A stretch of 64,000 bases of DNA from Neoconidiobolus thromboides FSU 785. Its lineage: Eukaryota > Fungi > Entomophthoromycota. The notes under the pieces are model-generated. The model had not been told where the DNA came from. It was given only the letters and a program-made list of their open reading frames with translations, and searched no databases. This document shows, one piece after another, positions 29,565 to 48,638 of this stretch. Position 1 is the first letter of the stretch. Each line of letters begins with the position of its first letter. The translations under genes and the position numbers were made by a program. The DNA is taken from positions 1 through 64,000 of the forward strand of contig MU626291.1 of assembly GCA_025603075.1 (NCBI GenBank), read 5' to 3'.

Positions 29565-32500
29565 ATGGGAGATTCGACTATAGTGACAATCCAAAGTGAA
29601 TTTCAATCTTTATTGCAATTACAAAAAAGTTTACCTTTAGAAACTATATTAAATAATAATTTACATTGTCATGTTAGTACACTTCCTCATTATGATTTAC
29701 ATTATTATAATAAACTCCCAGATGTAATTCAATCTCATTTGAAAGATGACAATTATCGTTCAGGATTTTTAAAACCATGGAATCAAATTTACTATATTAT
29801 CAATAATTTATTATTTCTATGGGATTTTACTAATAACAATATTCAACAAATAGATATGCAATATAATATAATTGCTTGTGAAGTTATTTCTCCAAAGCCA
29901 AACTGTTTCGATAAAGAGATTAAAGAGGTACTTTTAATAGCTAATGAGAATGAAATTGGATTATTTAATAGGGTGAAAGATGAAAATAATCAATATCAAT
30001 TATTCAAAAGTAAATATTTTATTAATGGTCAATTTAATCAACAATTCCATGTTACTAGTAGTAAATCTGGTAGAGTATTTTTGAGTTGTGGAGATAATAT
30101 AATGGAATTAGATTATCAATTACAAGATAGCCTTTTTTATAATAGTTGTCGATTAATTAAATTAAAATGGGATTTATTTGGCTTAACGCAATTATTTTAT
30201 AATACTAAAAAAGAGAGTTGTATTATTAAGTTGATAGTGGATGATGAAAGAAACATATGTTATTCACTTAACCAAGAAGGTGTTATTACTATTATTAATA
30301 TTTCTAAGGGACAATTTAATGTAGTTGGTAAGGTTAATGTTAAAGAAAAAGCAAAAGAATTTATCTTTCATAACGGAGTTTATAACATCATAGATATTCA
30401 ACTCATTTCAGTAAAAGAATCAAATATCATTAAATTGTTAGTTATAGATAATTTGGCTAATCATCTTTATTTTGCGTCCTCAATAGAAAATGATAATTCG
30501 TTAACAAATTTATCAGTATATTATGCGTTCCATAATAATAGTTTCAACAATAACGATATTATCAATAATGTTAATTATTACAATCGTGGTCTTTATTTAC
30601 ATAGTTTTTATAATAACAATAATGAAACTGAAGTTTATTTACAATATATGGATAGAACAGAAGGATTAATCAATCATACGACTAGTTTAATTCAAAATAA
30701 GTTAAAATTGAAGGGAAGAGTATTAGATATTATAGAATGGGATATTAATTTTAATCAAAAATTAAATATTTACAATCAACAAAGTATATCTCTAGAATTA
30801 GAAGAAAGTTTAAATCAATGCTATTCAGTTAATAGAAATTTTGTAATATTAACAAAAGAAAACATTTATATAATTAATAAATTAAGGCCAATCGATCAAT
30901 TACAATATATTTATAAATCTATTTATGATGAGTCAAAAGATTACTTAAAATTGAAAAATACAATGGAAAAATTTAATAATAATATTCAATTATTTATTCA
31001 ATTATATGGAAAACAGTTCACGATTTATTGTTTATTATTATTATCTTCAAAAAATAATTTTATTATTCAAAGGAATACTTTTAATCACAACGTATTTAAT
31101 TATTTAGGCTCAACCCCTTCTTCTTATAAATTAACTAAACAATATAATCAAACAATTAATGAATTAACGAAAGAAGATGATAAACTATTAGTTAAAGGTT
31201 ATTTATTATTATTAGTTAATATAATTCAACCAATTTATAATAATAATGGTATTAAAGTAAAACACATTGAAGGAGGAAATAGTATCAATATATTTTTTAA
31301 CATTGATTTAAAATGTTTAGAGTTTATTAAATTAATATTAGAATCTATATTAGAATCATCTAATAATCTAAATCAACAAGAAGAACAGTCTCAACAACTA
31401 ATAGATGTTTTTAAATTATTTAAAAAAACATTAAGTATCATTCATTTCTTTATTTCATTTCAACAGTTTAATGTATTAAATCTAATATCAAAACAATCAG
31501 AAATAATAATTGACAATTTTAATCAATTGTCATTTAAAAATTTATTCAATTATAATGAAAAATCAATTAATTTAATTCAAGATATTTATCTATTATTTTT
31601 AATCAACAATAACGAATTAAATATACAAGTAAGTTATAGTTTATTATATTATACAATCTAATTTAAGTTGATTTATTTATACATTTTTAATAGAAAGAGA
31701 AACTTGTTGATTATTATACAAAAAACTGTTTATATTTAGTAGATATTAATCAAGTAATTGTTACTCAGGTAAATTAAGTTACATATATAAAATGATATTT
31801 ATTTACTTATTTATTTTGTTAGGCACATAATAAATTATCAAATATTGATAGTAATATGATAAGTAATGAAATAAGATACTCAATGAAAGATGTAATTGGG
31901 CTGATTAATTATTTAATTGAACCGGTTAATTATCAACAATTGTTACAATTAAGTGAAAAATTAAGTCAATTGGGTTATCTTTGGGAGGCTTTATTATTAT
32001 GCTGTAAGAACGTTAATCGAACAAATAATGAAATAATAGAACAAATTCAATTAATGGAAATTTTATTAAATTATTTAAAACCAGAATTTAATAATTATAA
32101 ATTACAATTAAGTAGTAAAAGTAATAAAAATAAAATAACAGATAACATAATCAACTATTTAGATAAATTATTATTATGTGGTAATAAACCAATATTTTAT
32201 TCAAGTATTATTAATTGGTTTAATAACAATAATTTATTAAATGTGTTATTAAGTTGTCAATCTAAATCATTTTTAATTTATTTAAAATATTCGAATGAAA
32301 TTCAATGTCAATTAATTTATTGTGAATATTTAATGATTCATTATCAATTTAATGAAGCTAGTTTTAAACTATTTAATACTGCTAAAATAGAAAGGTAAAT
32401 AATACATAATAATAATAATAGTAGTAATGCCTTATAATTTCATAGTGAAAATTTAAATTTAGATGATCGACTAAGTTTATTATTAAAAGCCAAGCTAGTT

Positions 32501-33217
32501 ACAATCTACAATACTAATTTTAAATCGGAATCAATAAGGAAAAATCATTTAAAGTTAATTGATGATAATATCATGTCAACTAAATTACAATTCTTTATGA
32601 TTGAAGAATCTAAACTATATTTGAAATATAATATTATTTCAAATCAATTAAAATTTAACACAATTGAAAATATTAATAAGGTAAAAAATAATATTATAAA
32701 TCAAGATGCTAATATTGAAATATTATTAATAATACTCTTATATTTAGAACATCACTATAATTGAAGAAGAATCATTATATCTATCAAAGATATATCATTT
32801 ATATCTAAAAAAAGAACTAATGAATTTAAAGTCACTCGAAGAAAAATTACATTCCTTTATAATTAACGGTAAGTTTTAATTTAGCTCAAATTTATTTTAT
32901 CAGAGTTAATTATTAATAATAATTTTAGTATCTCAAAAATTACCTCGTGAAAAAGTAATTGAATTATTATCTTCTGCTTTTCTATTATTAAGGAAGTATG
33001 CTTTTCAATCCAATCATTCACCTTCTTTAAGTAAATTATTATTTAATATTGATTCATTTGATTTTACTAACTTTTATTTTTTATTATTTTAGAATCTTAT
33101 TGGAGTATATTAACTACATTACCAAATAGGGAACAAATTAATTTTACAGATTTAGTAATTAAGCAATTTCTTCAACTTCTTGGCTTCGATATAACAGAAA
33201 TTCAAGCGTTGAATTAG
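29565..33217 (+). CDS. Nup170/Nup155-family nucleoporin paralog N1 (7 exons, shortest C-terminus)
   Basis: SGRVFLSCGDNIMELDYQ, IVDDERNICYSL, RNFVILTKENIYIINKLRPIDQL, LNLDDRLSLLLKA. Exons 29565-31628, 31694-31768, 31823-32394, 32446-32680, 32748-32868, 32929-33030, 33093-33217 are phase-consistent. Confidence 0.8.
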
Positions 33218-33746
33218 ATTCAAAGTTTTATATCCCTTTTCATCTTAGCTTTATGACTTAATTGATAGTCAATGAATAAAAATTTTAACCTACGTTTTTA
33301 AGATAAATTGATAAATGTTACCTTTTTTATCATAATTTGAGATTTGTAGTTTGAATTTATGAATTTATTTTGTTTTTTAAGGGATAAAACGTTATTGAAG
33401 AATAGTTAAATTGATTTATTATTTACATATAACTTTTTGAAGGTTATAGTAATCATAAGCGGTTCGTTTATGAACAAAATCTGAGTGTACTATAAGAGAT
33501 ATACTAAACAAAAGAGTTGTTAATCATTTTTTATTAACTTTCAATATTAAATAGTTAATTAGCTAAGGATAGCAATAGTTATTTTTAAGTATTAATTTTT
33601 TACAGCTATTTCTTCTAAAATAAAGTTACTTCATTGAACCAATCAAACTCATCAAATAAACACCTGTTTTATGCAATCAAAAGATAATAATAACCTTCCA
33701 AAAATTATGGGAATTCATAATTCATTTCTCTCCAATATTTTCAAGA

Positions 33747-36700
33747 ATGCAGGAGTATAATTTTAATAAACTAACCAATAAAGCTTATTTCAAGCAACGA
33801 GGTTATAATGAGCCTGAACCATTTATACGTCCTGAGCCCGTAACAAAAATTCAAGAAGAACGTTATAAATCTACTGCAAGATCCCAGTTGGTTCATAATC
33901 TCAATTTATTATCTCCAGAAAATAATGATTTGGGGAATTTATTACTTACTCTACCAGAAAAATTTAGTTATGCAATAAAGAATTCAACTTTTGTGGATGG
34001 ACCTACCAATTTTCCAATAGCATTAAAAGAAAAGATAGAAGAATCTAAAGAAGATATCAAAGCTGGATTTTTAGGATATTTAAATTTTGCTTATTTTATA
34101 ATTGATGGAAATTTATATCTTTGGAATTATCAACAAGATGTTATTAAAGTAGAACTACAAAAAAGTGATTGTTTAAGTGTACATTTAGCTAAAGCAAAAA
34201 AAGAGTGTTTTGATGACAATGTAGAATGGACATTGATGATTTGTTGTAAAAGTACATTATCGGTAGTAGGAATATATTTTGATATTGAGAAAAATTTACA
34301 ATTTGCTTATTCCCCATATACTTTAGAATATGCCTTTTCTAAAGATGTTACAATGGTTTCAACTATTGATGGCAGAGTGTTTTTTACTAATAATGATGAA
34401 ATTTATGAAGTATTTTATCAGCTTAGAGAAACCTTATTTTCTCGTCGACTTGAAGTCAAAAAGTTAACTTCACCCAACTTAATGTCTTCTCTTTTTGGTT
34501 CAACCAGTGGGTATAGTAAAATCGTATTAGATGAAGATAGAAAGTTATTATATGCATTTAAATCCATTGAGGAAATTGTTATGATTAGTTTAGGTGAAAA
34601 AGGAAATCAGTTTATAGTTCAAAAAAGTTTCAAATTTGATACAACTAATATTGATCCTTTATATAGTCCTAAAATTATGGAAGCTCTTGCTTCGGGTATT
34701 ATTGAATTACATCCTATTCCTTTAGCTCAATCAAATATTGTTAGATTTGTTATTTTAACGCATAACGGTGCAAGCATATTTTATAGAGAAAATAAAAATT
34801 CAATAAATAATAGGGCACTTCCATTAGAATATCATGCTTTTCTTAGCCCTGCAGCTACAATCAATATCGATTTATCTCCCGTTACATTTTATAATAATGG
34901 ATTGACATTATCATCTTATAAAAAGGAAGAAAAAACATTGATTAGTTCACGTTATTTAGAAAGTACACCCGGATTAAATGATAATAAGATTAATGATTTA
35001 GTTTATAATTATTATGTTAAAGGAGATGTACTGGATATGATTGAGTTACCACCTGTTCCAACGGACCTTATATCAACAAAAAACAATGGAATTTCATTAG
35101 TAACACCGGATGATACAGTAGGGCAATATTATCGACCATTTCGTACTTTTATGATATTAACAACTGAAGGTTTGTATTGTATACAAAAATTTCGACCAAT
35201 TGATTGCTTGGAAGAAGCCATTACAAAGAGTCCCAATGATCGAGTAGAAAATTTTAAATTTAATTCAATATTAGAGTATTATGGAAAAGCAGAAGTTATT
35301 TGTATGTTGTTATTTTTATTATCTCATCATCCAGTGAGTAGAATGGGTAAATCAGGGTATACTGGAATGTATGGTATAGTAAATAGACCAACAAGACAAA
35401 TTAAATTAATGAAGCAATGCTATAAATATATTGAAAAAATCAAAGATAAAGCTACTTTACAAAGTATTGAAGTTAATTCACTTAAAAAATATTGGGCTCC
35501 TGGAAGTACAATTTGGATTAAAAATAGCGCTAGTTATATTGGATTTTTAAAATTAGTTACAAGATTATTACAACCTATTTGGAAAACTCATTTTATTAAA
35601 TCATTAATTATTGATAATAATAACACATTTGAATTTGGTGCATCAAAAGATATTTTAGATGTTATTAATCCTAATTTAACAGCTGTTATTAATTTAATTC
35701 ATAATATATCTCATTATAATGAATATAAACGATTAGGTACTGAAGAAAATGATACACTAACAGGGCCAACTTCTGTAGTAAATAATAATTTAGAATCGGA
35801 ATGGGAAGAAATCGAGTTATTTAGACAGTTAAGACAACAAGTAGATCGTGCTAGAGAATTAATTAACTTTCAACAAATCTTACTTGAGCTTAATGATGCT
35901 GGAATATTCAATTCACTTGAACAGGATACAATTAATAAAATAAGTTCACTTACTTTTGAAGACTTAACAGATATAAATAAATGGCACATATTGTTCAATC
36001 AAATAATAGCCGTGGTAGTTAAAGAAAAGGGAACTTCATCAACAGAAAATGTATCTGTGTTAAGTCCATTCAAACATTTCTGTCCTAACATATTATCAGA
36101 AGATAGTTATCATTATTTCAAAGGACTTGAAAACATATTAATTGCTAGTGTCCAACCCTCCTTTCACTTATCTACTTTATTTATTCGATTAGCACAAGAT
36201 TCCTTTGATGAAATGAAAACTATTTTATCAACAGATAAACTTTTAGGTATTATTCAAGACTATTGTGAGTTAGGTTTTTGTAATGGAGCTTTAATGGCCA
36301 TTGCAAATACAATCACAAAGATTAATAACCAAAAATTGGAATTAAACTTTGAAGCTAAAAAAATAGAAATTCAAGATTATTACCAATTAGCTATTATACC
36401 ATTGACTCATATTTATCCAATAATGAAAGCCAATTTTAATGCGTTTGAATTTACTAAAGATTATAGAAACATAAAAGCAAGTTTGATGAAGATCTTTAAT
36501 TCATGTTTAGATAAAAACTTCCATTATGTTATTTATGAATGGTTTATGGAATCTGGTCATATTAAAATGTTAATTGAATTCCAAACACCTTATTTAGAAC
36601 AATTTTTAAAAGAAAAACATAGTTCTATTGATAATGAATTTTTACAAAGATATTTATCCCATCATAAGCGTTACTTAGAAGCTACTGAAATTTACTTTAA

Positions 36701-37932
36701 ACGAGCTATTATTGAGAGGTAAAATAATATATCATAATGTATATAATAATTTTTTTATTAAATTAATTTTAATCAATTAGTTCTGAAATGTCATTACAAA
36801 AAAGAATCGAATTTTTACAAAAAGCAGATTATCAATCGGATGACTTTAGGATCAAAGATAAAAGTTATAATAGAGACAATATTCGTAAAAATATCAAGTA
36901 TATGCTCCGAATTGCTAGGTTGCAAGATTTGATGGTAAAGGAATTGATTTCAGCTTCCCATCTTGCTAAAGATTTGACTGAAGAAGCTATTAAAGGGTTA
37001 AATTTTAAATTATATGAACCTGCTGAGGTTATTTTTTAATTTTTTAATTATTTAAATATTTATTAAATCAATTTTTTAGCTTTATGATGAATTTATTGAG
37101 TCTCTTGAATTACCTATATCTGAAATTGCAATTACAATTTTATTTTTTAATCAATCAAAGAGTAGAAAGGAACTTATTGTACTTATTGAAGAATGGTACA
37201 AATTATGTAAGATATAGTTCAATTTTTAAACTGTTGTCATTAATGTTTTAATAGTAAAGAAAAATACGGTCAAAGTAGATTTCCCAAAGACATTGAGAGA
37301 AAACTTAAATTCGATTGTAAAAGCAGTTACCAAATGTCATGAAACATCGTATATAAGTAAGTTAAATTTGGTATCAAATAAGATTTAATTAACAACTTTT
37401 TAGAATATTGGCATGTACCTTTATTCCGGGTGTTTGCAGAAAATATCAATACAATTACACTTGAGTGGGTTATAGATTCATTATCCGAATTAGGTTATAC
37501 TTCATTTGAAATTTTAGGATTTTTGATGACTGCTTTGAATAATGATGTAATATATTCAATTTATAATAAACATAATTTAATATTTTTTGAAATAGGAATA
37601 TCCATTCAGTTCACCCAAATTTTGTCATGAAGTATTGAATTTAATATTTGCTTTGATTGAAGATCAAAGTGATACTATGCTTAAAAATAAGTAAGTAAAG
37701 TCAGTTTTTCATTTTATTTTATTTTATCCACTTTTCTAGACACCAAGATATTACCCATGCATTATCAACGATCCCTCACACTGTCCCAACGCTTACAGAT
37801 AGAATTAAAGCATATGAAGTACCTAAACAACGCTTTGATTTTGATTATAAATTTAGAAAACATAGGTATGATGTATTGAATTCATATACTGATGAAAGAA
37901 GTACCAAAAGTAGGAAAATTGGAAATAATTAA
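33747..37932 (+). CDS. Nup170/Nup155-family nucleoporin paralog N2 (multi-exon)
   Basis: LYLWNY, STIDGRVFF...IYEVFYQ, RTFMILTTEGLYCIQKFRPIDCL, YEWFMESGHIKMLIEFQTPYLEQFL, SLQKRIEFLQKA; first intron 36719-36780, stop 37930-37932. Confidence 0.85.
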
Positions 37933-38239
37933 GAAAAGGATTAAAAAAGTTAAGATTCAATTGTATTCGTAGTGGTTTCAAACTTAATTCTAGTTGATAT
38001 ACTGAATTAAAAATTGTTCACGTTAAGTATATATTTTTTGAGTTTTTTAAAATGTGATTCGAGTAGTATTTTTAGTGATGTAGTTTTAAGTGCATTTAAG
38101 ATGTATTGTTTTTTTTGAAGTATTTTTATTAAATAGTTATGTTTTATAAGCTTTATTTATTTCACAGAAAGAATAACCTTTGAGTTAAAATGTTATGTTA
38201 AAATTAATATTAATTGTCAATTTAGAATTTTGGATCTTT

Positions 38240-39096
38240 TGTGAAATATCGCTTTGTCAGTCTCATGGTTAATTATAGCATAACAATCGCCTAAGCTGTT
38301 GTGTTCTTGAGTTCAGAGAAAATCAATCCCACGTTCTTAGTTTGATTTGCTATGAGAATTTCTAGCTCCATCCCAAAGAATATTATCTTCTCATTTTGAT
38401 ATTTATACTTTTCAGAGTATAAAAGAGCTTACAGAGTATTGTGAAATCTGGTACTCAGGGTTTGGAGTCAAGAACAGCTATTGCTGGGTTGACTACTCTA
38501 TAAGTCGAAAGGTCTTAGTTTATGTGACTAAGATAGACTTGGATTATGAGGAATAGCACGTAATAGGTTACAAGCTATATAAGACAAATAGAATAGACAA
38601 TACTAATGTAAAATACTATTAAGAAAACTTAGTGGCTTTATTAAATGTTCGAGATATCAGGGATTAATTCAGTTAAAAAGCCTCGAACTATTATACTCTG
38701 TAAACTCTTTTATACTCTGAAAAGTATAAGTATCAAAATGAGAAGATAATATTCTTTTGGGTGGAACTAGAAATTCTCATAACAAATCAAAATAATTAAC
38801 CATGGGACTGACGAAGCGATATTTCACAGTATAGTAGTTCGAAGCTTTTTAACTGAATTATTCCCTGATATCTCGAACATTTAATAAAACCACTAAGTTT
38901 TCTTAATAGTACTTTACATAGATTTTACATTAGTATTGTCTATTCTATTTGTCTTATATAGCTTGTAACCTATTACGTGCTATTCCTCATAATCCAAGTC
39001 TATCTTAGTCACATAAACTAAGACCTTTCGACTTATAGAGTAGTCAACCCAGCAATAGCTGTTCTTGACTCCAAACCCTGAGTACCAGATTTCACA
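38240..39096. mobile_element. Solo-LTR-like element (outer copy, about 464 bp, CTTT TSD) interrupted by an inverted copy of itself
   Basis: Starts TGTGAAAT, ends ATTTCACA; CTTT at 38236-38239 and 39097-39100; removing the inner copy restores the reverse complement of the inner copy. Confidence 0.8.
38440..38828. mobile_element. Solo-LTR-like element (inner copy, 389 bp, GTAT TSD, opposite orientation)
   Basis: TGTGAAAT...ATTTCACA flanked by GTAT at 38436-38439 and 38829-38832. Confidence 0.8.
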
Positions 39097-39437
39097 CTTT
39101 TTATATTGAGCTCTAAATGTTTTGCTAGCTGTTATCTGAGTGAAATTTAGGAATTTTTAAATTGTTGTATGCATATAAAAAAGGTTGACAGTTCTCTGAA
39201 TAGCTTAGTTGATTTGTTAAAACTAAGTTTTATAATTAGAGATGTTTTTATTTGAAATTGTAAAATGGAAAAATTTAAATGGGGATGTCTGAGTTAATTT
39301 CATTTTCCTATCCAATTTTTAAATATAATTCTTTTTTTAAAATTTATTAGTAATTATAAAAGTTTAAAAAAAGTACTAATTAAAATTTAAATAATCATCT
39401 GAAATTTAGCTAAATTTTGAACAGATTAAAATCAAAT

Positions 39438-39541
39438 ATTTGGGGATGTTTTTTTGGTTTCATTATTTTTCCATTTTTAAACGCTATTTGAGTGGAAAGA
39501 TTGTTGGCAAAATTCTTAAACAAAATAGTACATCCCCATTT
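39438..39541 (-). mobile_element. MITE copy (ATTT TSD)
   Basis: ATTT-GGGGATGT...ACATCCCC-ATTT; a non-palindromic direct repeat. Confidence 0.9.
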
Positions 39542-39944
39542 GTTCAATATAAGCAGCTATCATGGTAAAAATAAAAATATTAAAATGAGCTGTTTTTAAT
39601 AGAAGCATAAGCTAATGATTTGTTAAGCTTTTTTAATAATAAAAATGATATTATTAAATAATATAGTAATTTCAAAGATTGAAATATGTAAAAATTAAAG
39701 AAATTATTTGAGCTTATCAAATACAAAAGCTTTAAGTAAAGTATATAAATGATCTTAAGTTTTGTTTCAAACAGTTTTATTAATTGTTTTATAGTTTTTG
39801 TTTTTAAACAAAAATAGTAATATAAAATTTAAGTTATTAAAATGATTTATTTGTTAGCATGTTAATACAAATTTAATACTTTTTTATAACAGATTTCTTA
39901 AAATAAAATTATTACATTATGTCTGGAAATTTTAAAAGTAAATA

Positions 39945-40049
39945 ATATGATGATATTTTTTTTGGCTTCATTACTTTTTCTATCTTTTAAACACTATTTG
40001 AGTAGAAAAATTATTAGTGAAATTCTTATACAAAAATACATCTCTACAT
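39945..40049 (-). mobile_element. MITE copy
   Basis: Consensus match about 155 bp downstream of the S9 peptidase stop; flanks ATAT/ACAT. Confidence 0.85.
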
Positions 40050-40203
40050 GCTTTGAATCTTTTTTAAAGCTATACTAAATAACAAATTCATTATGATTTG
40101 TTAAAATTAAACTAATTAAAATTTACTATAAATAACATGAAACAAAGTTAATTTACTAAAAATGAACAATCTAATATTCAAAAAACAGCTTTATTTTTAA
40201 ATT

Positions 40204-42267
40204 TTAATTATCAATTGGAACTGGATAAGGGGTTGTATAATTAATCCATTTAGCGGACCAATTCAAACATTCATTCATCCATTTAAGTGAATTAGCATTT
40301 CTAAGTACATGATGTGATTCATTAGGAAAATATAGGAATTTAGCTGGTATTTTTCTTCTTAACAAAGCATTATAAGTCGCTATCCCTTCACTTTCTGGTA
40401 CTTGATAATCTTTACCACCATGAATAACTAACATTGGTGTTTTCCATTTTTGAATATAACTTGAAGGAGAATCCCTTAGTGCAATAGATTTTACTTTAGT
40501 ATCCCATATATCTCCCCCCAATTCTGCAGTCATAAAATGTTGTACATCAATAGTATGATATAAATGAGTTAAATCAAATATACCAGCATGGGAAACAATG
40601 GCTTTGAATAGGTTTGTCCGACCATTTAACATATTCATCATATAGCCGCCATAGCTACCACCCCATGCAATGACTTTGGTTGCATCTAAATATTTATGTT
40701 CTTTTAATACATAGTCTAATCCCTTCAATGTATCTTCCACAGGTAATGTACCCCAATTACTAATAACTGAATTTATAAATTTATGACCCCAACCATAAGA
40801 ACCATGGAAATTAATACTAACTAAAACATAACCGGCATTAACAGGTATTTGATAATTCCATCGATTGGACCAATTATCATTAAATGGGTTTTCAGGACCA
40901 CCGTGAGACCAATATATTACTGGGTATTTTTTAGTAGAATCAAAATTAGGTGGTTTAATTATAAAACCTTGCACTGTTTGATTTAAAGCACCAGTGAAAT
41001 AAAAAGGTTCATACGAATTTAATTGAAATTGTTGTAAATATTCAATATTAATATTTGATAATAGTTTTAAATCATTACCATCTTTTTTAACTGAATATAA
41101 TTCTTGTGGATGTTTTGAAGAATGTCTTACTACTATTAATTCATCTTTTAATTCTTTTAATAAAGAGGTACCTCCTGTTTTGACTATTGCTTTATATTCT
41201 TCTGTTTTTATATTTAACTCAAATAATTTATCGTAGCCATTATCAGGTATTGTCAAATATAAACAATCTCCATCATTTGAAAATGTAATAACTTCAAAAT
41301 GAGCATCCCAATTTTTAGCTATTATTTGAGTCTTCTTTGTTTCTAAATTATAATACACTATCTTTGTTTTATCTGCTGTATTAATATCACTATCCATTTG
41401 AACCCAAGCTAAATAGTTTCCATTAGGTGAAAATTTGGGACTTGTAATTAAACCTTTATCTTTTTCAGATATTAATATAGGTTCTGATTTTCCGTCAGTA
41501 GCTACTAAATATAATTCAACAGTGGATTTAATAGCTTGATATTTAGTATTTGGACGAGTTAAGAAAGCAACCCATTTCCCATTTGGGGATAAAGCATAAG
41601 CATGATCTTCATAGTAAGGTCTTAATGGGGATTCCAAATTGGGAATATTTTTTAATAAATCAATACTCTCACTGACTATTTTATCCTTAAAGAAATCACT
41701 AACAAATACATGTTGATTAATATAATCATACCATTGATCCCAATTTCGAACATAACTTTGTTCAAAAGTAACTCCGCTACTAAAACTTTTTTGCATCTTT
41801 TTAACAGTTACTCCAGAGGTAAAGATTAATTTGTTGTGCTCTAAATTGATTTTAACTCCATTAATATCTCCCACTGTAAAATTACTATGTTGAAATAAAG
41901 AACTTTTGCCCAATTTTAAATCTAAGGACCAAATATTGGGACTACCGGATCTTTCGGATACAAATGCAATTCGATTTTCATCAATAAATGAAATAGGGAC
42001 AAAATCATTAGTTGTTAATTCGGTGATATCTTTAGTTACATTAAGGGTAGTATCCAATAATTTATATAATGTAGTTTTACGATCTGTTTCCTTATTATAG
42101 GTAGTGGAGGAGTAAATAAATTGAGTTCCATTATCGGAGGAGGTAAAATAGTATGGACGAGCCATGGTCACTAAATCCGAAGGTGTAAAAGCTACACTTT
42201 GGCTTAAGACAGCCAATGGTGTAATGCATAAAGTTATTAATGATATAACAAATGGCTTATGAACCAT
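40204..42267 (-). CDS. Secreted S9 prolyl-oligopeptidase-family peptidase (dipeptidyl-peptidase V-like)
   Basis: Signal peptide; propeller repeats (ALSPNGKWVAF, PKFSPNGNYLAW); HGGP; nucleophile GGSYGG; HGGKDYQV (Asp); FPNESHHV (His); intronless. Confidence 0.92.
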   Translation of the reverse strand: MVHKPFVISLITLCITPLAVLSQSVAFTPSDLVTMARPYYFTSSDNGTQFIYSSTTYNKETDRKTTLYKLLDTTLNVTKDITELTTNDFVPISFIDENRIAFVSERSGSPNIWSLDLKLGKSSLFQHSNFTVGDINGVKINLEHNKLIFTSGVTVKKMQKSFSSGVTFEQSYVRNWDQWYDYINQHVFVSDFFKDKIVSESIDLLKNIPNLESPLRPYYEDHAYALSPNGKWVAFLTRPNTKYQAIKSTVELYLVATDGKSEPILISEKDKGLITSPKFSPNGNYLAWVQMDSDINTADKTKIVYYNLETKKTQIIAKNWDAHFEVITFSNDGDCLYLTIPDNGYDKLFELNIKTEEYKAIVKTGGTSLLKELKDELIVVRHSSKHPQELYSVKKDGNDLKLLSNINIEYLQQFQLNSYEPFYFTGALNQTVQGFIIKPPNFDSTKKYPVIYWSHGGPENPFNDNWSNRWNYQIPVNAGYVLVSINFHGSYGWGHKFINSVISNWGTLPVEDTLKGLDYVLKEHKYLDATKVIAWGGSYGGYMMNMLNGRTNLFKAIVSHAGIFDLTHLYHTIDVQHFMTAELGGDIWDTKVKSIALRDSPSSYIQKWKTPMLVIHGGKDYQVPESEGIATYNALLRRKIPAKFLYFPNESHHVLRNANSLKWMNECLNWSAKWINYTTPYPVPIDN

Positions 42268-43660
42268 TTTTATAAAGCGACAACTAATTTTATTATTATT
42301 GAATTTAATAAAATATGGAGTGTTTTATTGAGTATTTATACTTTTGTTATAAACACTCGATAATACTTATGTTAATAAAGATTAGTAATTCAAAACAATC
42401 ATTATTTATGTGCTAATTGTATATATCAACCTTATTTTTTTATTGAGTTAAATTTAATTATAATTGAAAATTGGGATATTCTAAATGGTTGAAATTATTA
42501 TTTTTCTATCTAATTAAATTCATGATCATGTTATAATTGATTAATATTTTAAAAAAATATCGCTTTAACAAGTATTTATGGTAAAAGTTATTAAAAAATA
42601 TTAATCCTTAAAATATATTATTTTTCATAAGTGTAATGCTATATTTTATTTTAAATTAGTACAATATTTATATATGCTATCAAATATAAGCATTTAATAT
42701 ACTACAACTATCCTTTCTATTTTTAATAACTACATCCAATAACTTCCTGATTAATTGTTTTAAAGAATAAGGATAAGGGTTTTATTAAATGTCATAATAT
42801 TTTCTTGAATTCAATTATTCAAAGTATAATAATAATATATTAATTCAACATCACATCACTCATTTTGATTTTCTTGCAGAGATTTAGCTAAATATGGAAA
42901 TTACTAAAAATAATTGAATTATTCAAATTCAAATCCAAAGATAAATGAAATAATAGAATAGTTAATATGTTATAGAAACAAAGTAATTGAAATTTACTTT
43001 TATTAGTAGATACTATAATAGTTAAAGTTTATTCTATTTACTATTATTACTTAACCTTATTTCAAATTCCTTTTTAAAAACCTTAGATATCATTCTAAAT
43101 AGTTCAAAATAAAGTTGAAATTTCAATAGTTTTATTGTATATTAGTTTAAAAAAATAATTAACCTCGAAATGATAGACAGAAAACTCGCTTATTATAATC
43201 GGAATAAAAGAATCTCTACTTTTTTCTTATTTCAATTTACTCAATGCTCTGGTAAATAATTCGATTTTTTAACCATTAGAATTCTCCAAAATGGAAGGAG
43301 CAAAAGCCGATTTATCCAAGATTCAAATTTTGAATCAAAACTTTAAACCTTAATTTTTACCATTTATAGCAATTTCTTTTGAAAAGTGCGTAAATGGAAA
43401 TGAAAATTAAATTATTAAATTATATCTAATATTATAACAATTGATATTAATATAATAAAGTTAATAAAAAAATAAAATAGTTTGTTTTTTTAGGAACATT
43501 GTCAAACTATTATGATTAATATCAAATTAAATTATAAGACCCATTAGGCAGATTAAAAAGAATTAGCTATAAGATAAAAAACAATCAAAAAACTTGATTA
43601 TTCAATTTAAAAAAGTATTTTATATTTAAATAATAAAAAAAGAATTCCCTGCATTTCCGA

Positions 43661-46600
43661 TTATTCTAAGGTAGATGATTCCTTATTAAAAGTAAAATTA
43701 TTCGGTGGTAATCCAACTTGATAACTATTTTTATCACTACGATTCCTTTTCCATTCGTTAATGAACTCCTCTTTATTTTCCAAATTCAATATTCTTTTAC
43801 GTTGTTTACAATTTTCTAAGTTTTCTCTTTTCATTTCCTCTCTTACTATTTCTCCATATTTTTCTTCTAATAAATTGATTGGTGTTAAATGCTCATTATA
43901 TCTTTTGCCATAATTTATTAATTGATGTCGATAAGTGGAAAGTTCCTGTTGTTTTTTATTATCTTCTAAGGCGGTTGAAAATGATTTTGCTTTTCTTGCA
44001 GATAATGGTAAATGTTGAATTAATTCTTGTAAATAATCCTTTTCGATTGAATTCTGTGGTTGAATATTATATAAATAAGGTGTAACAAACCCAATTCTAT
44101 ATAAAATTAAAAGATTAATACAATATTATTATTATTATTATTAGAACTCACTCTTTTTCCAATTCATAGTTGTTCTTCATATACATAATAATTGAATGAA
44201 TTGCTTTTAATATATTAATATTAAGAATGTTATTCTTTGAATTTAGATTCAATTGAAACTAAAAATAAAAACAAAATAATAGAGATTAATTATAAATCAT
44301 AATAAAATGATTAATAAACTACCTGGTTTTTTAACATTGATTTTAATCCTAATAATAAATCGTTATTTTTAAAACCGAATTCGATTAAATGTTGAATTAT
44401 CCATTCAAGATTAACGGAAGTTATATTGGAAAATTCACATAAAAATAGTTGAATAATGGGTTCTATAAATGAATTAAAATAATTAATATTAATTATAATA
44501 ACAATATAGTATATATAATAAAACTTACTTAAATGAATATGATTCAATGGTTTACTTACATATTCAAAGATTGATTTTAATTCTTTCATTATCGTTTCTG
44601 CTTCTTCAAAAGTCTCGTTTTTATTTACTGATAAATAATAAATAATGATTTTATTAATTTATTAACATTATCTATAATTTATTAACTTACTTTGATTAAA
44701 TAAATTTCTCCATAATTTTTCTGCTTCTATTTCATTAAAAATATTACCAAATGCTAATTTATAAATAATTTGTAATTTTATATAATTATTGAAATTATCT
44801 AATTCATGAGTCATCTAAATTAAAAAACAAAAAGAATTAAACTCAAATGATAATAACATACAATTAATACTTACTTCGTCAATGGAATAATACCTTTGAT
44901 TTAATCTGTCAATTATATTTTGATATTTATCAATTTGTTCGTTTTCTTTTGTTCTAATTTCTCCTTGTAATATACGTTGAAAATTAATCATTTTAACTCC
45001 ATGATTAATCTTATGTAACCATTCATATTTGAAACTTTCTTCTTCATTTTTATGAATTTTATGAGCAGAATTATCTGCTTTTATTAATAGTTTCATTCTT
45101 TCGTATGAATCTAAACTTTCTCTAGAATAAGAACGTAAGAGAATATTCAAGAATTTAACTTAAAAAAAGCTTACAAATTACTCATCGCTTTTTCCGTATA
45201 TAATTTAGTTAACTTTAAATAATCTTGATTATACTCATAATAAACTTCCAAAATAGGTTGACCATTAGCAGTAACTTTACTTGATGCTAAATATTTTTCC
45301 AAGTATTCGTTCTTAAAATCAAACAATAAATATGCCAGTCCATTTTGAATATAATATTCATAAATATAATCATACAATTGATCATCTTTCAATTCCATAA
45401 GTACAGTTTCAATAAATCTTAAAACAGTTTGATATTCTGTTAATGTTGAACTTACTTGAGTATACCCCGTTTGTGGTGTATATTGAAATTTGATATTATT
45501 ATTAATGGATTTTTCTTTTTCTTCTCTTTTTAACATATCTTCTTTTTTTAATAATGGTAATAAATGATTTAATGGTAATTCTAATAATTTATAATATTCA
45601 CTATTTATTATATTATTATTATCATGTCCTTCTTTTGTCATTATAGTTGATATTAATTTTAAATTATTAATAATAGTTTGAATGGCATTAATAGGTTGAT
45701 TTGATTCCAAATAAAGATTTACTATTAATTGAAGCTTCCTTTTACTTAATGGCTGTTTGTTAAGCTTCAAAGTTGATTCTGCTTTACTTTGGTAATCTAA
45801 CTTATAAAACTTATTACTTTGTGTTAAACTTAAATTTAGATATTCCATAGCCTATTAAATAAGGTTAATCTTTATAATTATACTGGAATAGCTATTATTT
45901 TACCTTATAAACATAATATTCATTTTCAGATATTAAAGTAGGACAATATTGACGAATAATTTCCAACACAGATGAATCCTAAAACAATAAATTAATAAAA
46001 CAACACTAAACAAACAATAAATAAAACATACTGTATCTTTGGCTTCTTTTAATTCTTTAATTGTATTAATTAAACCCAAAATAATAAATTCAATAAATTC
46101 TGTGTTATTATTATTATTATTTAAATTTAAAATATCATTAAATGTTAGTTGAGATAAATTAATAATAGATTGTTGATCTAATTTTTTAATTAAATATAAT
46201 GTGTTTAATTCAAATAATAATAACAAAAATTCTATTAATTCTAGTATTCGATTAATGACTTTGATTAATTCATCTATTAATGGATTTGATTGATTTATTG
46301 GTAATAATTTTCTATCGTTATTGTAAAATTGAACCAAATCATTATCATTGTTACTATTAAATAAACTAAATTGACTTAATACAACAATGAATTGATAAAT
46401 GGATTTTTGTATAAATTTTAATTTAGTGATATTATTATTAAATTGAATATTAACAATTTGTTGATTTTGATTTGTATTAACTTTTAATAATGGTGTATTA
46501 AAGATTGGTGACAAAATACCAGCTAATCCACGAATACAAGCTAAATATTGAATCTTTTTCTCAATTTTTTCTTGTTGACCATTGACTTGTACTATTATAT

Positions 46601-48341
46601 AACTTTTATTAAATAATGATTCATATTGTTGATAGTTTTTTAGAATAATGTTTAATATGGGTTTATATTCATTTAGTTTGTTGTGTTGATCTTCTAACTG
46701 TAAATCCTTATTGAATTGATTATTAATAAAATATGGATATTTTGATAATAATAAATAACATAAACTTAATGTTTCAATAATACCATATTTGATAATAAAA
46801 CTCTTTAACTCCTTGTTATTTATAATATTTTCTTCATTTAATAAATCAATTGTATTTCTATTCTTTAATTGAATTAAATTATCTAATATATATTTCAATT
46901 GATCAATTGGTCGAAATTTAATTAACTTATATATCTTTTTATTACTTAAGATATAAATTTGACGTTGATAAAAATAGTACTGGCTATTTGTATTATCTGA
47001 ATAATAATCTTTAATATTGATATTCATTATGTTATCTATTTTTTTATCTTCCATAAAATCCATAACTCTTTCTTGCTGATCAAAGTTACTTTGAATATCA
47101 TAAGTAACTAATGTATCTATCCCAAATAATGATTTTTTATCTTCGTTATTAACTTGATCAACCAACACATTTTTGTTGTTTAAATATTCACTCGCACATT
47201 CAGAATATTTGATTTGAATTATATTATCCTCTTTATTATTATCTTCATAAATAAAACAACTCATTAACATACCATTATAATATTCTCCATTATAATACGT
47301 GTTTTTAAATGTAGTATCTTGATTACCAATAATAAAATGACTTACTTCTAGGTTACCAACTTCATTTATTAACTTGTCATCCGTCGATTTTAAATAAATC
47401 CAAGTACCATCATAAGTTAATAATACTAATCGAATTAAATCTTCCTTTTGTTTTGGTATAATATTCAATTTCACAATCCCTTTTGAAATAGCCCTTTTTA
47501 ATTGATTATTTTTCAAAAAAGTAGGTGAAAGATGAGTTATTGTTGCTTTCCATTGAAATAAATCGCCTTTTATATCATAAATATCAATATTGGTATCCTT
47601 ATTTAAAGTATATAATGTATTCCTTTCCAAATCAATTTGTAAACCTCTTAAATTTTTATAACGAAAATCAAAAAATTTAGTTATTATAGAGAGGTAGTTT
47701 GTGTGATTTACTACTGATGTTTGTTTTGAAAATAAGCTTGATTTCAATTGATACTTTAATTCTAATACATCACCATTATTAGCCAAAAATATTCTTCCTT
47801 CATTTGTTGAAGCAATCAAATCATTTTCATAACAATAACAATCAAACTTATAAGGAGTATGTAATACTTGAATCTTATCCTCATCTATTTTAATCCCATA
47901 TAAATAAACCTTACTTTGAAATCCAATCAATAATCCTTTGATTACGCTTTCTTCAAAGCATTCTTTTTTGATATCAACAACACTTATAAATTTAAACTGA
48001 TCTTCCAGTAATTCAATCTGAATCAAATCTTTTTTGAAATCCCATAAATTCAATTGTCCATCAGTGACATAATAAAGATAATTGATCTCTTTTAGTAGCC
48101 CTTTTTTGATATTGGCATCTTGTAATTTCAATGCTATTGATGGTGGCGACTCGTAATGAGTTAATGAAAACTCAGATAAACAAGAACCTTGTTTTTCTAT
48201 GGTGGAGGTAAGATACAACTCAGAATGGTAACCCTTTATTTGAGAAGTTAAATCGGATACGATTTCATTTTGATAATGGGCATTAAGTGAATATAGTGAT
48301 TCACTATCACTTAGAGTCTTGTTTTCGGTGGTTGAATTCAT
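43661..48341 (-). CDS. Nup170/Nup155-family nucleoporin paralog N3 (multi-exon)
   Basis: LNLWDF, STNEGRIFLANNGDVLELKYQ, IDLERNTLYTL, KFRPIDQL, YERMKLLIKA; exon 1 48341-46032, 75-nt exon 45978-45904, intron 45174-45122; stop 43661-43663. Confidence 0.8.
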
Positions 48342-48536
48342 TCTCCTTGATTGAAATAAAAAACTAAAAAAGTTTTTCAAAGGTTTTGTCAAAAAAAATT
48401 TTAAAAATTTTAAAAATTTTAAAAATTTCAATTAGTCATTTTCGTCATTAACCAATAAAATTAAAGCAAAATATCAAAAAAAATCCAAAAAAAAATGTAG
48501 TAAAATTCCAGCCAGCATATCCTTTATATTTATATA

Positions 48537-48638
48537 GTATGAAAGTGTTTTAGTTTCATCACCTTTTTCATTCTCTAAGTGCTATTTGGGTGGAAAAATT
48601 GTCAGTAAAGTTCTTAAACAAAAAACATAACCCCATAT
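48537..48638 (-). mobile_element. MITE copy about 200 bp upstream of N3
   Basis: Reverse-orientation consensus match. Confidence 0.8.

What the first reader, a model, noticed from the sequence alone, without database searches (positions are those of the whole stretch)
29565..48341. Three highly diverged Nup170/Nup155 nucleoporin paralogs clustered in 19 kb
Seen: three large genes (two tandem on plus, one inverted) share the blocks LW(D/N)(F/Y), GR(V/I)F...E.xYQ, D.(E/D)R..xY, RPID.L and R...L.KA, yet differ almost everywhere else; all three frames look intact. Known: this inner-ring scaffold is usually single-copy (Nup155; Nup157/Nup170 pair in yeast); nucleoporin paralogs define distinct nuclei in ciliates, and nuclear transport genes evolve fast in Drosophila drive and hybrid-incompatibility systems. 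Inference: specialised pore types (stage-, nucleus- or position-specific) or a genetic conflict.
Basis: partly seen in the sequence, partly recalled or inferred. Interest (0 to 1): 0.8.

Follow-up and report, generated by a model that had tools for sequence, protein, structure and literature searches.

The report
Three diverged Nup170 pore-scaffold genes clustered
The insect-pathogenic fungus Neoconidiobolus thromboides has three intact, very different copies of the gene for Nup170/Nup155, a main scaffold protein of the nuclear pore, side by side; most organisms have one, so the pore's inner ring here may use specialised versions.

Summary
The window is Neoconidiobolus thromboides FSU 785 contig MU626291.1.

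**The three genes**
- A: 29565-33217 (+), 7 exons, 1097 aa.
- B: 33747-37932 (+), 7 exons, 1292 aa.
- C: 48341-43661 (-), 9 exons, 1404 aa.

**Family.** They share only 22-27% identity. Each matches solved Nup170/Nup155/Nup157 structures by sequence, and none matches Nup133. Predicted folds of A and C are a beta-propeller plus alpha-solenoid.

**Origin.** Shared intron positions and phases show duplication at the DNA level.

**Expression and constraint**
- One spliced 4.7-kb RNA contig covers C and shows that the public model (1021 aa) is truncated.
- Strain differences in C are mostly synonymous (23:15, pN/pS about 0.15).
- A is held by the same RNA runs, but its splicing was not read. B's expression was not tested.

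**Phylogeny.** The triplet forms one clade, sister to the Entomophthoraceae copies. Massospora cicadina separately has two diverged copies. The whole order sits on a long branch and has altered membrane-binding motifs.

**Function.** B is the least derived copy; A and C are fast-evolving. Position-specific use within one pore, as with yeast Nup157/Nup170, is the most likely role, but this is inference.

Other first-stage notes cover this same stretch; none was met on other DNA.

The parts
29565..33217 (+). Paralogue A, 7 exons (29565-31628, 31694-31768, 31823-32394, 32446-32680, 32748-32868, 32929-33030, 33093-33217), 1097 aa. It is the most derived copy and has a shorter C-terminus.
   Evidence: The exon model translates exactly to public protein P0003, and all introns are GT..AG of 51-67 nt. 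No Pfam hit. phmmer matches ctNup170 NTD at E 4.5e-12 and hNup155 at 1e-10. AF2 model: pLDDT 80.3, propeller plus solenoid. Foldseek top hits are Nup157/170/155 chains at E 1e-38. RNA run X1 holds 0.83 of the sampled words.
33747..37932 (+). Paralogue B, 7 exons (33747-36718, 36781-37027, 37080-37206, 37255-37356, 37404-37546, 37596-37690, 37740-37932), 1292 aa. It is the least derived copy.
   Evidence: The exon model equals P0001, K502DRAFT_363843. Pfam Nucleoporin_N 47.7 bits and Nucleoporin_C 121 bits. PDB Nup157/170 at E 2.8e-19. It has the shortest branch of the three and an amino-acid make-up like the neighbouring peptidase gene. Expression was not tested.
43661..48341 (-). Paralogue C, 9 exons (48341-46032, 45978-45904, 45851-45175, 45121-44875, 44814-44691, 44627-44529, 44462-44323, 44258-44152, 44096-43661), 1404 aa. 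The public model stops at 45171 (1021 aa).
   Evidence: A single 4706-nt spliced RNA contig of run X1 spans 48335-43164 with all 8 introns removed. Runs X2, X3 and X5 from another strain show the same joints. The CDS was rebuilt. Pfam Nucleoporin_C 53.8 bits. PDB ctNup170 NTD at E 5.7e-12. AF2 pLDDT 79.3, pTM 0.79. Foldseek top hits are Nup157/170/155 at E 2e-30. 23 synonymous against 15 non-synonymous strain differences.
31694..31768 (+). 75-nt exon 2 of A, flanked by two phase-0 introns that B lacks.
   Evidence: Exon model and phases. It aligns with the 75-nt exon of C.
45904..45978 (-). 75-nt exon 2 of C, flanked by two phase-0 introns that B lacks.
   Evidence: Joints in the RNA contig of X1. 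Phases.
43164..43660 (-). 3' untranslated region of C, as far as the RNA contig reaches.
   Evidence: The X1 contig piece 43164-44096 is continuous past the stop codon at 43661-43663.

Best explanation
The cluster holds three functional paralogues of the inner-ring scaffold nucleoporin Nup170/Nup155. They arose by local DNA-level duplication, with one copy now inverted, in the lineage leading to Neoconidiobolus after it split from the Entomophthoraceae. B is the least derived copy and probably carries the ancestral scaffold role. A and C have diverged much further and drifted toward AT-codon amino acids, but they remain intact. C is transcribed and correctly spliced, and the same RNA runs hold A. 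C is under purifying selection. The most likely mode of action is inferred, not shown. All three would be built into the membrane-proximal layer of the same nuclear pores, each specialised for a different structural position or set of linker contacts. Budding yeast divides peripheral and equatorial positions between Nup157 and Nup170 in this way, and vertebrate Nup155 fills inner-ring and bridging positions with a single protein.
For: Identity:
- Pairwise E-values of 1e-30 to 1e-38.
- Direct phmmer hits of each copy to Nup170/Nup155/Nup157 structures, and none to Nup133.
- Predicted propeller-plus-solenoid folds of A and C match Nup157/170/155 chains at E 1e-38 and 2e-30, TM about 0.65. Nup133-type chains reach only E 1e-9 to 1e-13, TM about 0.24.

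DNA-level duplication:
- Four intron positions with identical phases are shared by all three copies.
- Two more are shared by B and C.
- Two more, flanking a 75-nt exon, are shared by A and C.

Lineage specificity:
- The triplet is one clade at 98/98 in the LG+C20 tree and 99.6/100 after Dayhoff-6 recoding.
- It is sister to the Entomophthoraceae copies, inside a 100/100 Entomophthorales clade.
- The alternative that places B with the Entomophthoraceae is rejected at p-AU 0.0017.

Function retained:
- C is fully spliced in a 4.7-kb RNA contig and in a second strain.
- A is held at 0.83 of words in the same RNA run.
- C shows 23 synonymous against 15 non-synonymous differences, pN/pS about 0.15, binomial p 8e-9.
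- The open frames have a chance probability of about 1e-50.

B as the hub:
- B is the best hit of both A and C.
- It has the shortest branch, passes both Pfam domains and has a normal amino-acid make-up.

Precedent for division by position:
- Nup157 is peripheral and Nup170 equatorial in the yeast inner ring (bioRxiv 10.1101/2021.10.26.465796).
- The human pore has 32 inner-ring plus 16 bridging Nup155 copies (PMC8700311).
- A and C are present in the same RNA samples.
Against: - No localisation, interaction or stoichiometry data exist, so the position-specific model is analogy only.
- A's splicing was not read directly, and no selection test was possible for A or B.
- A has no Pfam hit, lacks the last roughly 200 residues that B and C have, and is 45% FYMINK. 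This could mean relaxed constraint.
- Long branches and a shared AT-driven composition could inflate support for triplet monophyly. A rougher 48-row tree did not reject the alternative (p-AU 0.10).
- The branching order inside the triplet is unresolved. LG+C20 gives (A,(B,C)), while recoding gives ((A,C),B), which the shared introns fit better.
- A fourth copy elsewhere in the genome was not excluded at the DNA level.
Confidence: 0.5

Rival explanations
1. Stage- or cell-type-specific pores. Each paralogue would build the inner ring of pores in a different life stage (hyphae, primary or secondary conidia, resting spores, growth inside the insect), giving compositionally distinct pores at different times.
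For: Extreme divergence with retained fold. Nucleoporin paralogues mark different nuclei in ciliates (bioRxiv 10.1101/116277, listed). The word shares of A and C differ somewhat between runs.
Against: A and C are both well represented in the same RNA runs X1, X2, X3 and X5, so they are not mutually exclusive in those cultures. No stage-resolved data were examined.
Confidence: 0.2
2. Relaxed constraint or neofunctionalisation. B alone is the working Nup170. A, and perhaps C, would be decaying duplicates or would have taken a role outside the pore scaffold, for example another membrane-coat-like or chromatin-linked role.
For: A has no Pfam hit and a truncated C-terminus. A and C have very long branches, 3.0 and 2.3 against 1.55 for B. 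Their make-up is mutation-bias-driven: FYMINK 0.45 and 0.43, GARP 0.065 and 0.087, against 0.37 and 0.145 in B.
Against: No frame disruption in 1097 or 1404 codons at about 0.1 stop probability per codon. All splice sites are canonical. C is under purifying selection. Confident full-length Nup170-like fold predictions. Both are held in RNA assemblies.
Confidence: 0.15
3. Genetic conflict. Recurrent duplication and fast evolution of Nup170 in Entomophthorales would be driven by an arms race, for example with viruses, transposons or meiotic drivers that exploit nuclear transport. The paralogues would act as decoys or escape variants.
For: The whole Entomophthorales clade sits on a long stem (0.94). 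It shows independent duplications in Neoconidiobolus (three copies) and Massospora (two copies at about 27% identity). The WF and ALPS-proline motifs, conserved elsewhere, are altered across the order.
Against: The only selection test shows purifying selection in C. No sign of positive selection was tested or seen. Scaffold nucleoporins diverge fast in sequence generally, at about 20% identity between fungi and animals (PMC6371224).
Confidence: 0.1

Closest known systems
Saccharomyces cerevisiae Nup157 / Nup170 paralogue pair
   Same: Both are duplicated Nup155-family inner-ring scaffold proteins with a beta-propeller plus alpha-solenoid. The predicted folds of A and C match these chains best (7woo_C, 7tbi_A2). 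In yeast the two copies take different positions, peripheral and equatorial.
   Different: Here there are three copies, not two. They sit in one 19-kb cluster rather than dispersed, and share only 22-27% identity. The duplication is independent, since the triplet is monophyletic inside Entomophthorales. The WF and ALPS-proline membrane motifs are altered. No functional data exist.
Trypanosoma brucei TbNup144 / TbNup119
   Same: A lineage-specific pair of diverged Nup155/170-like scaffold proteins with different interaction partners (PMC8421043).
   Different: It lies in a different eukaryotic supergroup, is a pair rather than a triplet, and has proteomic interaction data. None exist here.
Massospora cicadina Nup170-like pair (KAI0221251.1 and KAI0228581.1)
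   Same: It belongs to the same fungal order, has two copies at about 27% identity, and falls in the same fast-evolving Entomophthorales clade.
   Different: On the tree the Massospora copies arose by a separate duplication within Entomophthoraceae. Whether they are linked in the genome, and whether they are expressed, was not examined.
Nup133 (outer-ring Y-complex)
   Same: It shares the Pfam Nucleoporin_N/C domains and the propeller-plus-solenoid plan.
   Different: No copy hits Nup133 by sequence. Outer-ring chains score about 17-26 orders of magnitude worse by fold, with TM about 0.24.

Membership tests
Nup155/Nup170/Nup157 inner-ring scaffold nucleoporins | N-terminal seven-bladed beta-propeller followed by an elongated alpha-solenoid in one chain | tested here: met
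   AF2 models. A has strands over residues 34-439 and helices over 442-1097, pLDDT 80.3. C residues 1-1021 give pLDDT 79.3 and pTM 0.79. B is covered by Pfam Nucleoporin_N plus Nucleoporin_C. The models were built from an alignment of Nup155 homologues, so this is not fully independent.
Nup155/Nup170/Nup157 inner-ring scaffold nucleoporins | Significant sequence similarity to characterised Nup155/170/157 proteins | tested here: met
   phmmer against PDB: B 2.8e-19, A 4.5e-12, C 5.7e-12. All top hits are Nup170/Nup155/Nup157.
Nup155/Nup170/Nup157 inner-ring scaffold nucleoporins | Pfam Nucleoporin_N (PF08801) and Nucleoporin_C (PF03177) above the gathering score | tested here: inconclusive
   B passes both (47.7 and 121 bits). 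C passes Nucleoporin_C only (53.8 bits). A passes neither.
Nup155/Nup170/Nup157 inner-ring scaffold nucleoporins | Placement within the Nup155/170 tree among fungal orthologues | tested here: met
   The triplet is sister to the Entomophthoraceae Nup170 copies in a 100/100 clade, nested among fungal and animal Nup155/170.
Nup155/Nup170/Nup157 inner-ring scaffold nucleoporins | Membrane-binding WF motif (3CD loop) and ALPS loop with a conserved proline (3D4A loop) | tested here: not met
   Other fungi and animals in the alignment keep G-W-F and the loop proline. A, B and C have L-F in place of W-F, and the proline column is not kept. The Entomophthoraceae copies are altered too. Motif definitions come from bioRxiv 10.1101/2021.10.05.463194. 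Hydrophobic and aromatic residues remain in the loop, so membrane binding may persist.
Nup155/Nup170/Nup157 inner-ring scaffold nucleoporins | Location in the pore inner ring and binding of Nup53/Nup35, Nic96/Nup93 and Nup145N/Nup98 linkers | not testable with these tools
   This needs tagging, pull-downs or cryo-ET.
Nup133 (Y-complex) | Best sequence and fold match to Nup133 rather than Nup155/170 | tested here: not met
   There are no Nup133 hits at E up to 1. Outer-ring chains reach only E 1e-9 to 1e-13, TM about 0.24.

The most novel reading that the evidence does not exclude
Entomophthorales fungi have rebuilt the membrane-facing layer of the nuclear-pore inner ring. Nup170 has duplicated independently at least twice in the order, giving three copies in Neoconidiobolus and two in Massospora. 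It has lost the otherwise conserved WF and ALPS-proline membrane motifs and evolves unusually fast. In N. thromboides the coat would be an obligate three-paralogue heteromer, or there would be distinct pore types. Either would be an inner-ring architecture not seen in any studied eukaryote.
Probability: 0.25. Interest if true: 0.7.

Novelty: new member of a known kind. Interest (0 to 1): 0.5.

Why it matters
Nup155/Nup170 forms the membrane-proximal coat of the pore's inner ring and is single-copy in most eukaryotes. The yeast pair Nup157/Nup170 is the main example of one structural role being divided between paralogues by position. An independent, more extreme case now exists: three copies at about 24% identity, still linked, A and C both held in the same RNA samples. 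It offers a natural experiment on how many distinct Nup155 roles a pore has and which surfaces define each position. The finding also shows that Nup170 evolves unusually fast and duplicates repeatedly in Entomophthorales, a group already known for odd nuclei and very large genomes. Practically, it corrects the public model of gene C from 1021 to 1404 aa, and it flags the public model of the neighbouring peptidase gene as doubtful.

Tried and rejected
- **Word-index protein searches.** All three gave nothing useful. The query with B's first exon and the 8-sequence alignment returned only B itself. The Entomophthoraceae alignment returned P0004 plus distant Nup155s. Low-complexity AT-driven words seem to swamp the 8000-candidate limit. 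Copy number in Conidiobolus coronatus and other relatives therefore could not be read.
- **Pfam on A.** No family, whether given as pieces or as the whole protein.
- **Pfam on C's tail.** Nothing significant on C's last exon or exon 4.
- **First exon-model script.** A naive recursive search timed out and was replaced by a memoised search. My homology-guided guess for C's last two introns was wrong at two boundaries, and the RNA contig corrected it.
- **Further exons of A.** None were found beyond 33217.
- **Fourth copy or relic.** None in the window by tblastn.
- **Exact-sequence look-ups of A and B.** Only the NCBI assembly was found, with no transcript contigs.
- **MAFFT --auto on 66 long rows.** It timed out, so a faster alignment was used.
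- **P0004 and P0005.** The organisms behind these Logan transcripts (SRR29032805, SRR26825228) could not be named.
- **Nup133 membership.** Considered and rejected.
Full report
**Source and layout**

A protein search with the largest open frame returned a 100% match to K502DRAFT_363843 of Neoconidiobolus thromboides FSU 785. The exact-sequence look-up placed it on contig MU626291.1 of GCA_025603075.1, and window coordinates equal contig coordinates. The DNA is very AT-rich, with GC of 0.20-0.30. Between 29.5 and 48.4 kb there are three sets of large open frames, two on the + strand and one on the - strand. An S9 prolyl-oligopeptidase-family open frame lies between them at 40204-42267 (-).

**Check of the observation**

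The first exons of the three genes match each other by BLASTP:
- B-A: 27% identity, E 1e-34.
- B-C: 25% identity, E 2e-38.
- A-C: 27% identity, E 7e-30.

**Gene models**

| Gene | Span and strand | Exons | Length | Support |
|---|---|---|---|---|
| A | 29565-33217 (+) | 7 | 1097 aa | translates exactly to public protein P0003 |
| B | 33747-37932 (+) | 7 | 1292 aa | translates exactly to public protein P0001 |
| C | 48341-43661 (-) | 9 | 1404 aa | RNA-supported introns |

- B was mapped by matching the public protein back to the DNA. Its introns are 47-62 nt and GT..AG.
- For A, a memoised search over GT..YAG introns gave one model of the annotated length.
- The public model of C has 1021 aa and stops at 45171. 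Homology to B's tail suggested that the gene continues.
- Laying four RNA runs on 43000-48600 settled it. Run X1 holds one 4706-nt contig from 48335 to 43164 with eight introns removed, all GT..AG on the minus strand.
- Runs X2, X3 and X5, from a strain about 1% different, show the same joints.
- With these introns the C frame stays open to 43661. The public model is truncated.
- The public model of the neighbouring peptidase gene is called across 40204-44167. It therefore overlaps C's last exon and 3' UTR.
- No further exons of A were found beyond 33217.
- tblastn of A, B and C found no fourth copy or relic in the window.

**Family membership**

- Pfam: B passes Nucleoporin_N and Nucleoporin_C. 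C passes Nucleoporin_C only. A passes neither.
- phmmer against PDB sequences: every copy hits Nup170/Nup155/Nup157 directly (B 2.8e-19, A 4.5e-12, C 5.7e-12). None hits Nup133.
- AlphaFold2 models were built from a 60-sequence alignment of homologues. [quoted passage not shown]
- Foldseek against the PDB ranks Nup157/Nup170/Nup155 chains from yeast, human, Xenopus, Dictyostelium and Arabidopsis first. E is down to 1.8e-38 for A and 2.0e-30 for C, with TM of about 0.65. Outer-ring chains follow at E 1e-9 to 1e-13 with TM of about 0.24.
- The Nup133 alternative is therefore rejected.
- One defining detail is not kept. The WF motif and the ALPS-loop proline of the propeller were taken from the human Nup155 cryo-EM preprint. 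They are conserved in the other fungi and animals in the alignment. A, B and C have L-F in place of W-F and do not keep the proline column. The Entomophthoraceae copies are altered as well.

**Origin**

Intron positions and phases were mapped on the three-way alignment.
- Four introns with identical phases (2, 0, 1, 1) are shared by all three genes.
- Two more (phases 0, 2) are shared by B and C, in the part of the tail that A lacks.
- Two phase-0 introns flanking a 75-nt exon are shared by A and C and are absent from B.
- Exon sizes in the tail nearly coincide: 247/127/102 nt in B, 247/124/99 nt in C, 235/121/102 nt in A.

This shows duplication of genomic DNA, not retroposition.

**Relatives and tree**

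- A profile of the three first exons was searched against 1.84 billion representative proteins. It found 744 relatives at E up to 1e-3.
- The top three hits were C, B and A. A Logan transcript, P0004, followed at 240 bits, and everything else scored 167 bits or less.
- No close orthologue of A or C is in that library.
- Named neighbours are Massospora cicadina, Entomophthora muscae, Basidiobolus and other zygomycetes and chytrids.
- B is the best non-self hit of both A and C.
- A careful LG+C20 tree of 21 rows gives an Entomophthorales clade at 100/100. Inside it the triplet has 98/98 support and is sister to the Entomophthoraceae copies at 95/92.
- Placing B with the Entomophthoraceae, apart from A and C, is rejected on that tree (p-AU 0.0017). 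It was not rejected on a rougher 48-row quick tree (p 0.10).
- After Dayhoff-6 recoding, which damps the AT-driven composition, the triplet is still one clade (99.6/100). The inner order changes from (A,(B,C)) to ((A,C),B) at 69/85. The A+C-specific introns fit the second order better.
- I therefore treat the triplet as lineage-specific and its internal order as unresolved.
- Massospora cicadina has two copies. KAI0228581.1 is 48% identical to the E. muscae protein. KAI0221251.1 is about 27% identical to both. They come from a separate duplication on this tree.
- The whole order sits on a long stem (0.94). The end branches are 3.0 for A, 2.3 for C and 1.55 for B, against a median of 1.41.

**Are the copies alive?**

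- The RNA-run index holds 0.83 of A's sampled words and 0.81 of C's in run X1. It holds about half of each in runs of a second strain.
- The intron-free 4.7-kb contig proves that X1 is cDNA and that C is fully spliced.
- The second-strain runs show 38 coding differences in C, of which 23 are synonymous and 15 are not. Only 18% of sites are synonymous, so pN/pS is about 0.15 and the binomial p is 8e-9. C is under purifying selection.
- For A the evidence is indirect:
  - The frame is open over 1097 codons at about 0.10 stop probability per codon, roughly 1e-50 by chance.
  - All splice sites are canonical.
  - The fold prediction is confident.
  - A is held in RNA assemblies.
- A and C have drifted toward AT-codon amino acids (FYMINK 0.45 and 0.43, GARP 0.065 and 0.087). 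B (0.37, 0.145) resembles the neighbouring peptidase gene (0.34, 0.16). This fits B being the most constrained copy.

**Mechanism**

What is shown:
- There are three intact, diverged, DNA-duplicated Nup170-family genes.
- C is expressed and constrained.
- A is held in the same RNA assemblies.

What is inferred is how they are used.
- In budding yeast the independent pair Nup157/Nup170 occupies peripheral and equatorial positions of the inner ring and binds different linkers.
- The human pore places one Nup155 in 32 inner-ring and 16 bridging positions.
- Trypanosomes have a pair with different partners.

By analogy, and because A and C occur in the same RNA samples, I favour co-assembly with division of positions. 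My confidence in that mechanism is about 0.4-0.5, while my confidence in the identity is above 0.9. The rivals are stage-specific pores, relaxed constraint or a new role for A and C, and conflict-driven turnover. None is excluded.

**Literature**

Searches for Conidiobolus or Entomophthora with nucleoporin found only peptidase-family counts. A search for 'Nup155 paralogs' found nothing. Reviews list the yeast and trypanosome pairs. I found no description of this triplet or of the Massospora pair.

**Verdict**

The functional ideas remain open. The finding is a solid, moderately surprising gene-family expansion in a core pore scaffold, with a corrected gene model and a wider pattern across Entomophthorales. 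I score interest at 0.5 and class it as a new member of a known kind.

Noticed in passing
window 40204-44167 (-): The public gene model for the S9 peptidase spans 40204-44167 and gives 565 aa. The DNA has a single uninterrupted 687-aa S9 peptidase open frame at 40204-42267. RNA shows that 43164-44096 belongs to the transcript of nucleoporin gene C. The public peptidase model therefore looks wrong and overlaps C's last exon and 3' UTR.
   Followed up: partly
window 38337-39096: Nested inverted repeats lie in the 2.3-kb gap between gene B and the peptidase gene. They include arms of 175 nt that are 100% complementary (38440-38614 and 38922-39096). A first-stage note calls this a solo-LTR-like quasi-palindrome.
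   Followed up: partly
window 44709-45026: Run X5 holds a 258-nt contig over C's exons 4 and 5. It carries 12 differences and a shifted, non-canonical joint (44816/44879, AA..CG, two extra letters). The other runs agree with the reference there. It may be a second allele, another strain in the sample, or an assembly error.
   Followed up: no
P0006 and P0067 (Massospora cicadina KAI0221251.1, KAI0228581.1): Massospora cicadina also has two strongly diverged Nup170-family proteins, about 27% identical to each other's group. One is 48% identical to the Entomophthora muscae protein.
   Followed up: partly
alignment A4, around residues 181-225 of A: The WF motif and the ALPS-loop proline of the Nup155/170 propeller are conserved in Basidiobolus, Mucoromycota, chytrids, Pneumocystis, Malassezia, insects and a tunicate. 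They are changed or deleted in most Entomophthorales sequences examined.
   Followed up: partly
window 48342-48431 (-): Upstream of C's ATG the frame stays open through a short KFL-type repeat, which ORF listing reports as a TTG-started extension. The RNA contigs end within it (about 48364-48422), so it is probably 5' UTR and not coding.
   Followed up: no
other contigs of the same genome (first-stage notes): Unverified first-stage notes report extra Nup98/Nup145N-like FG-nucleoporin paralogues and a highly diverged Nup192/Nup205-like gene in this genome. Partners of Nup170 may therefore also be multiplied or fast-evolving.
   Followed up: no
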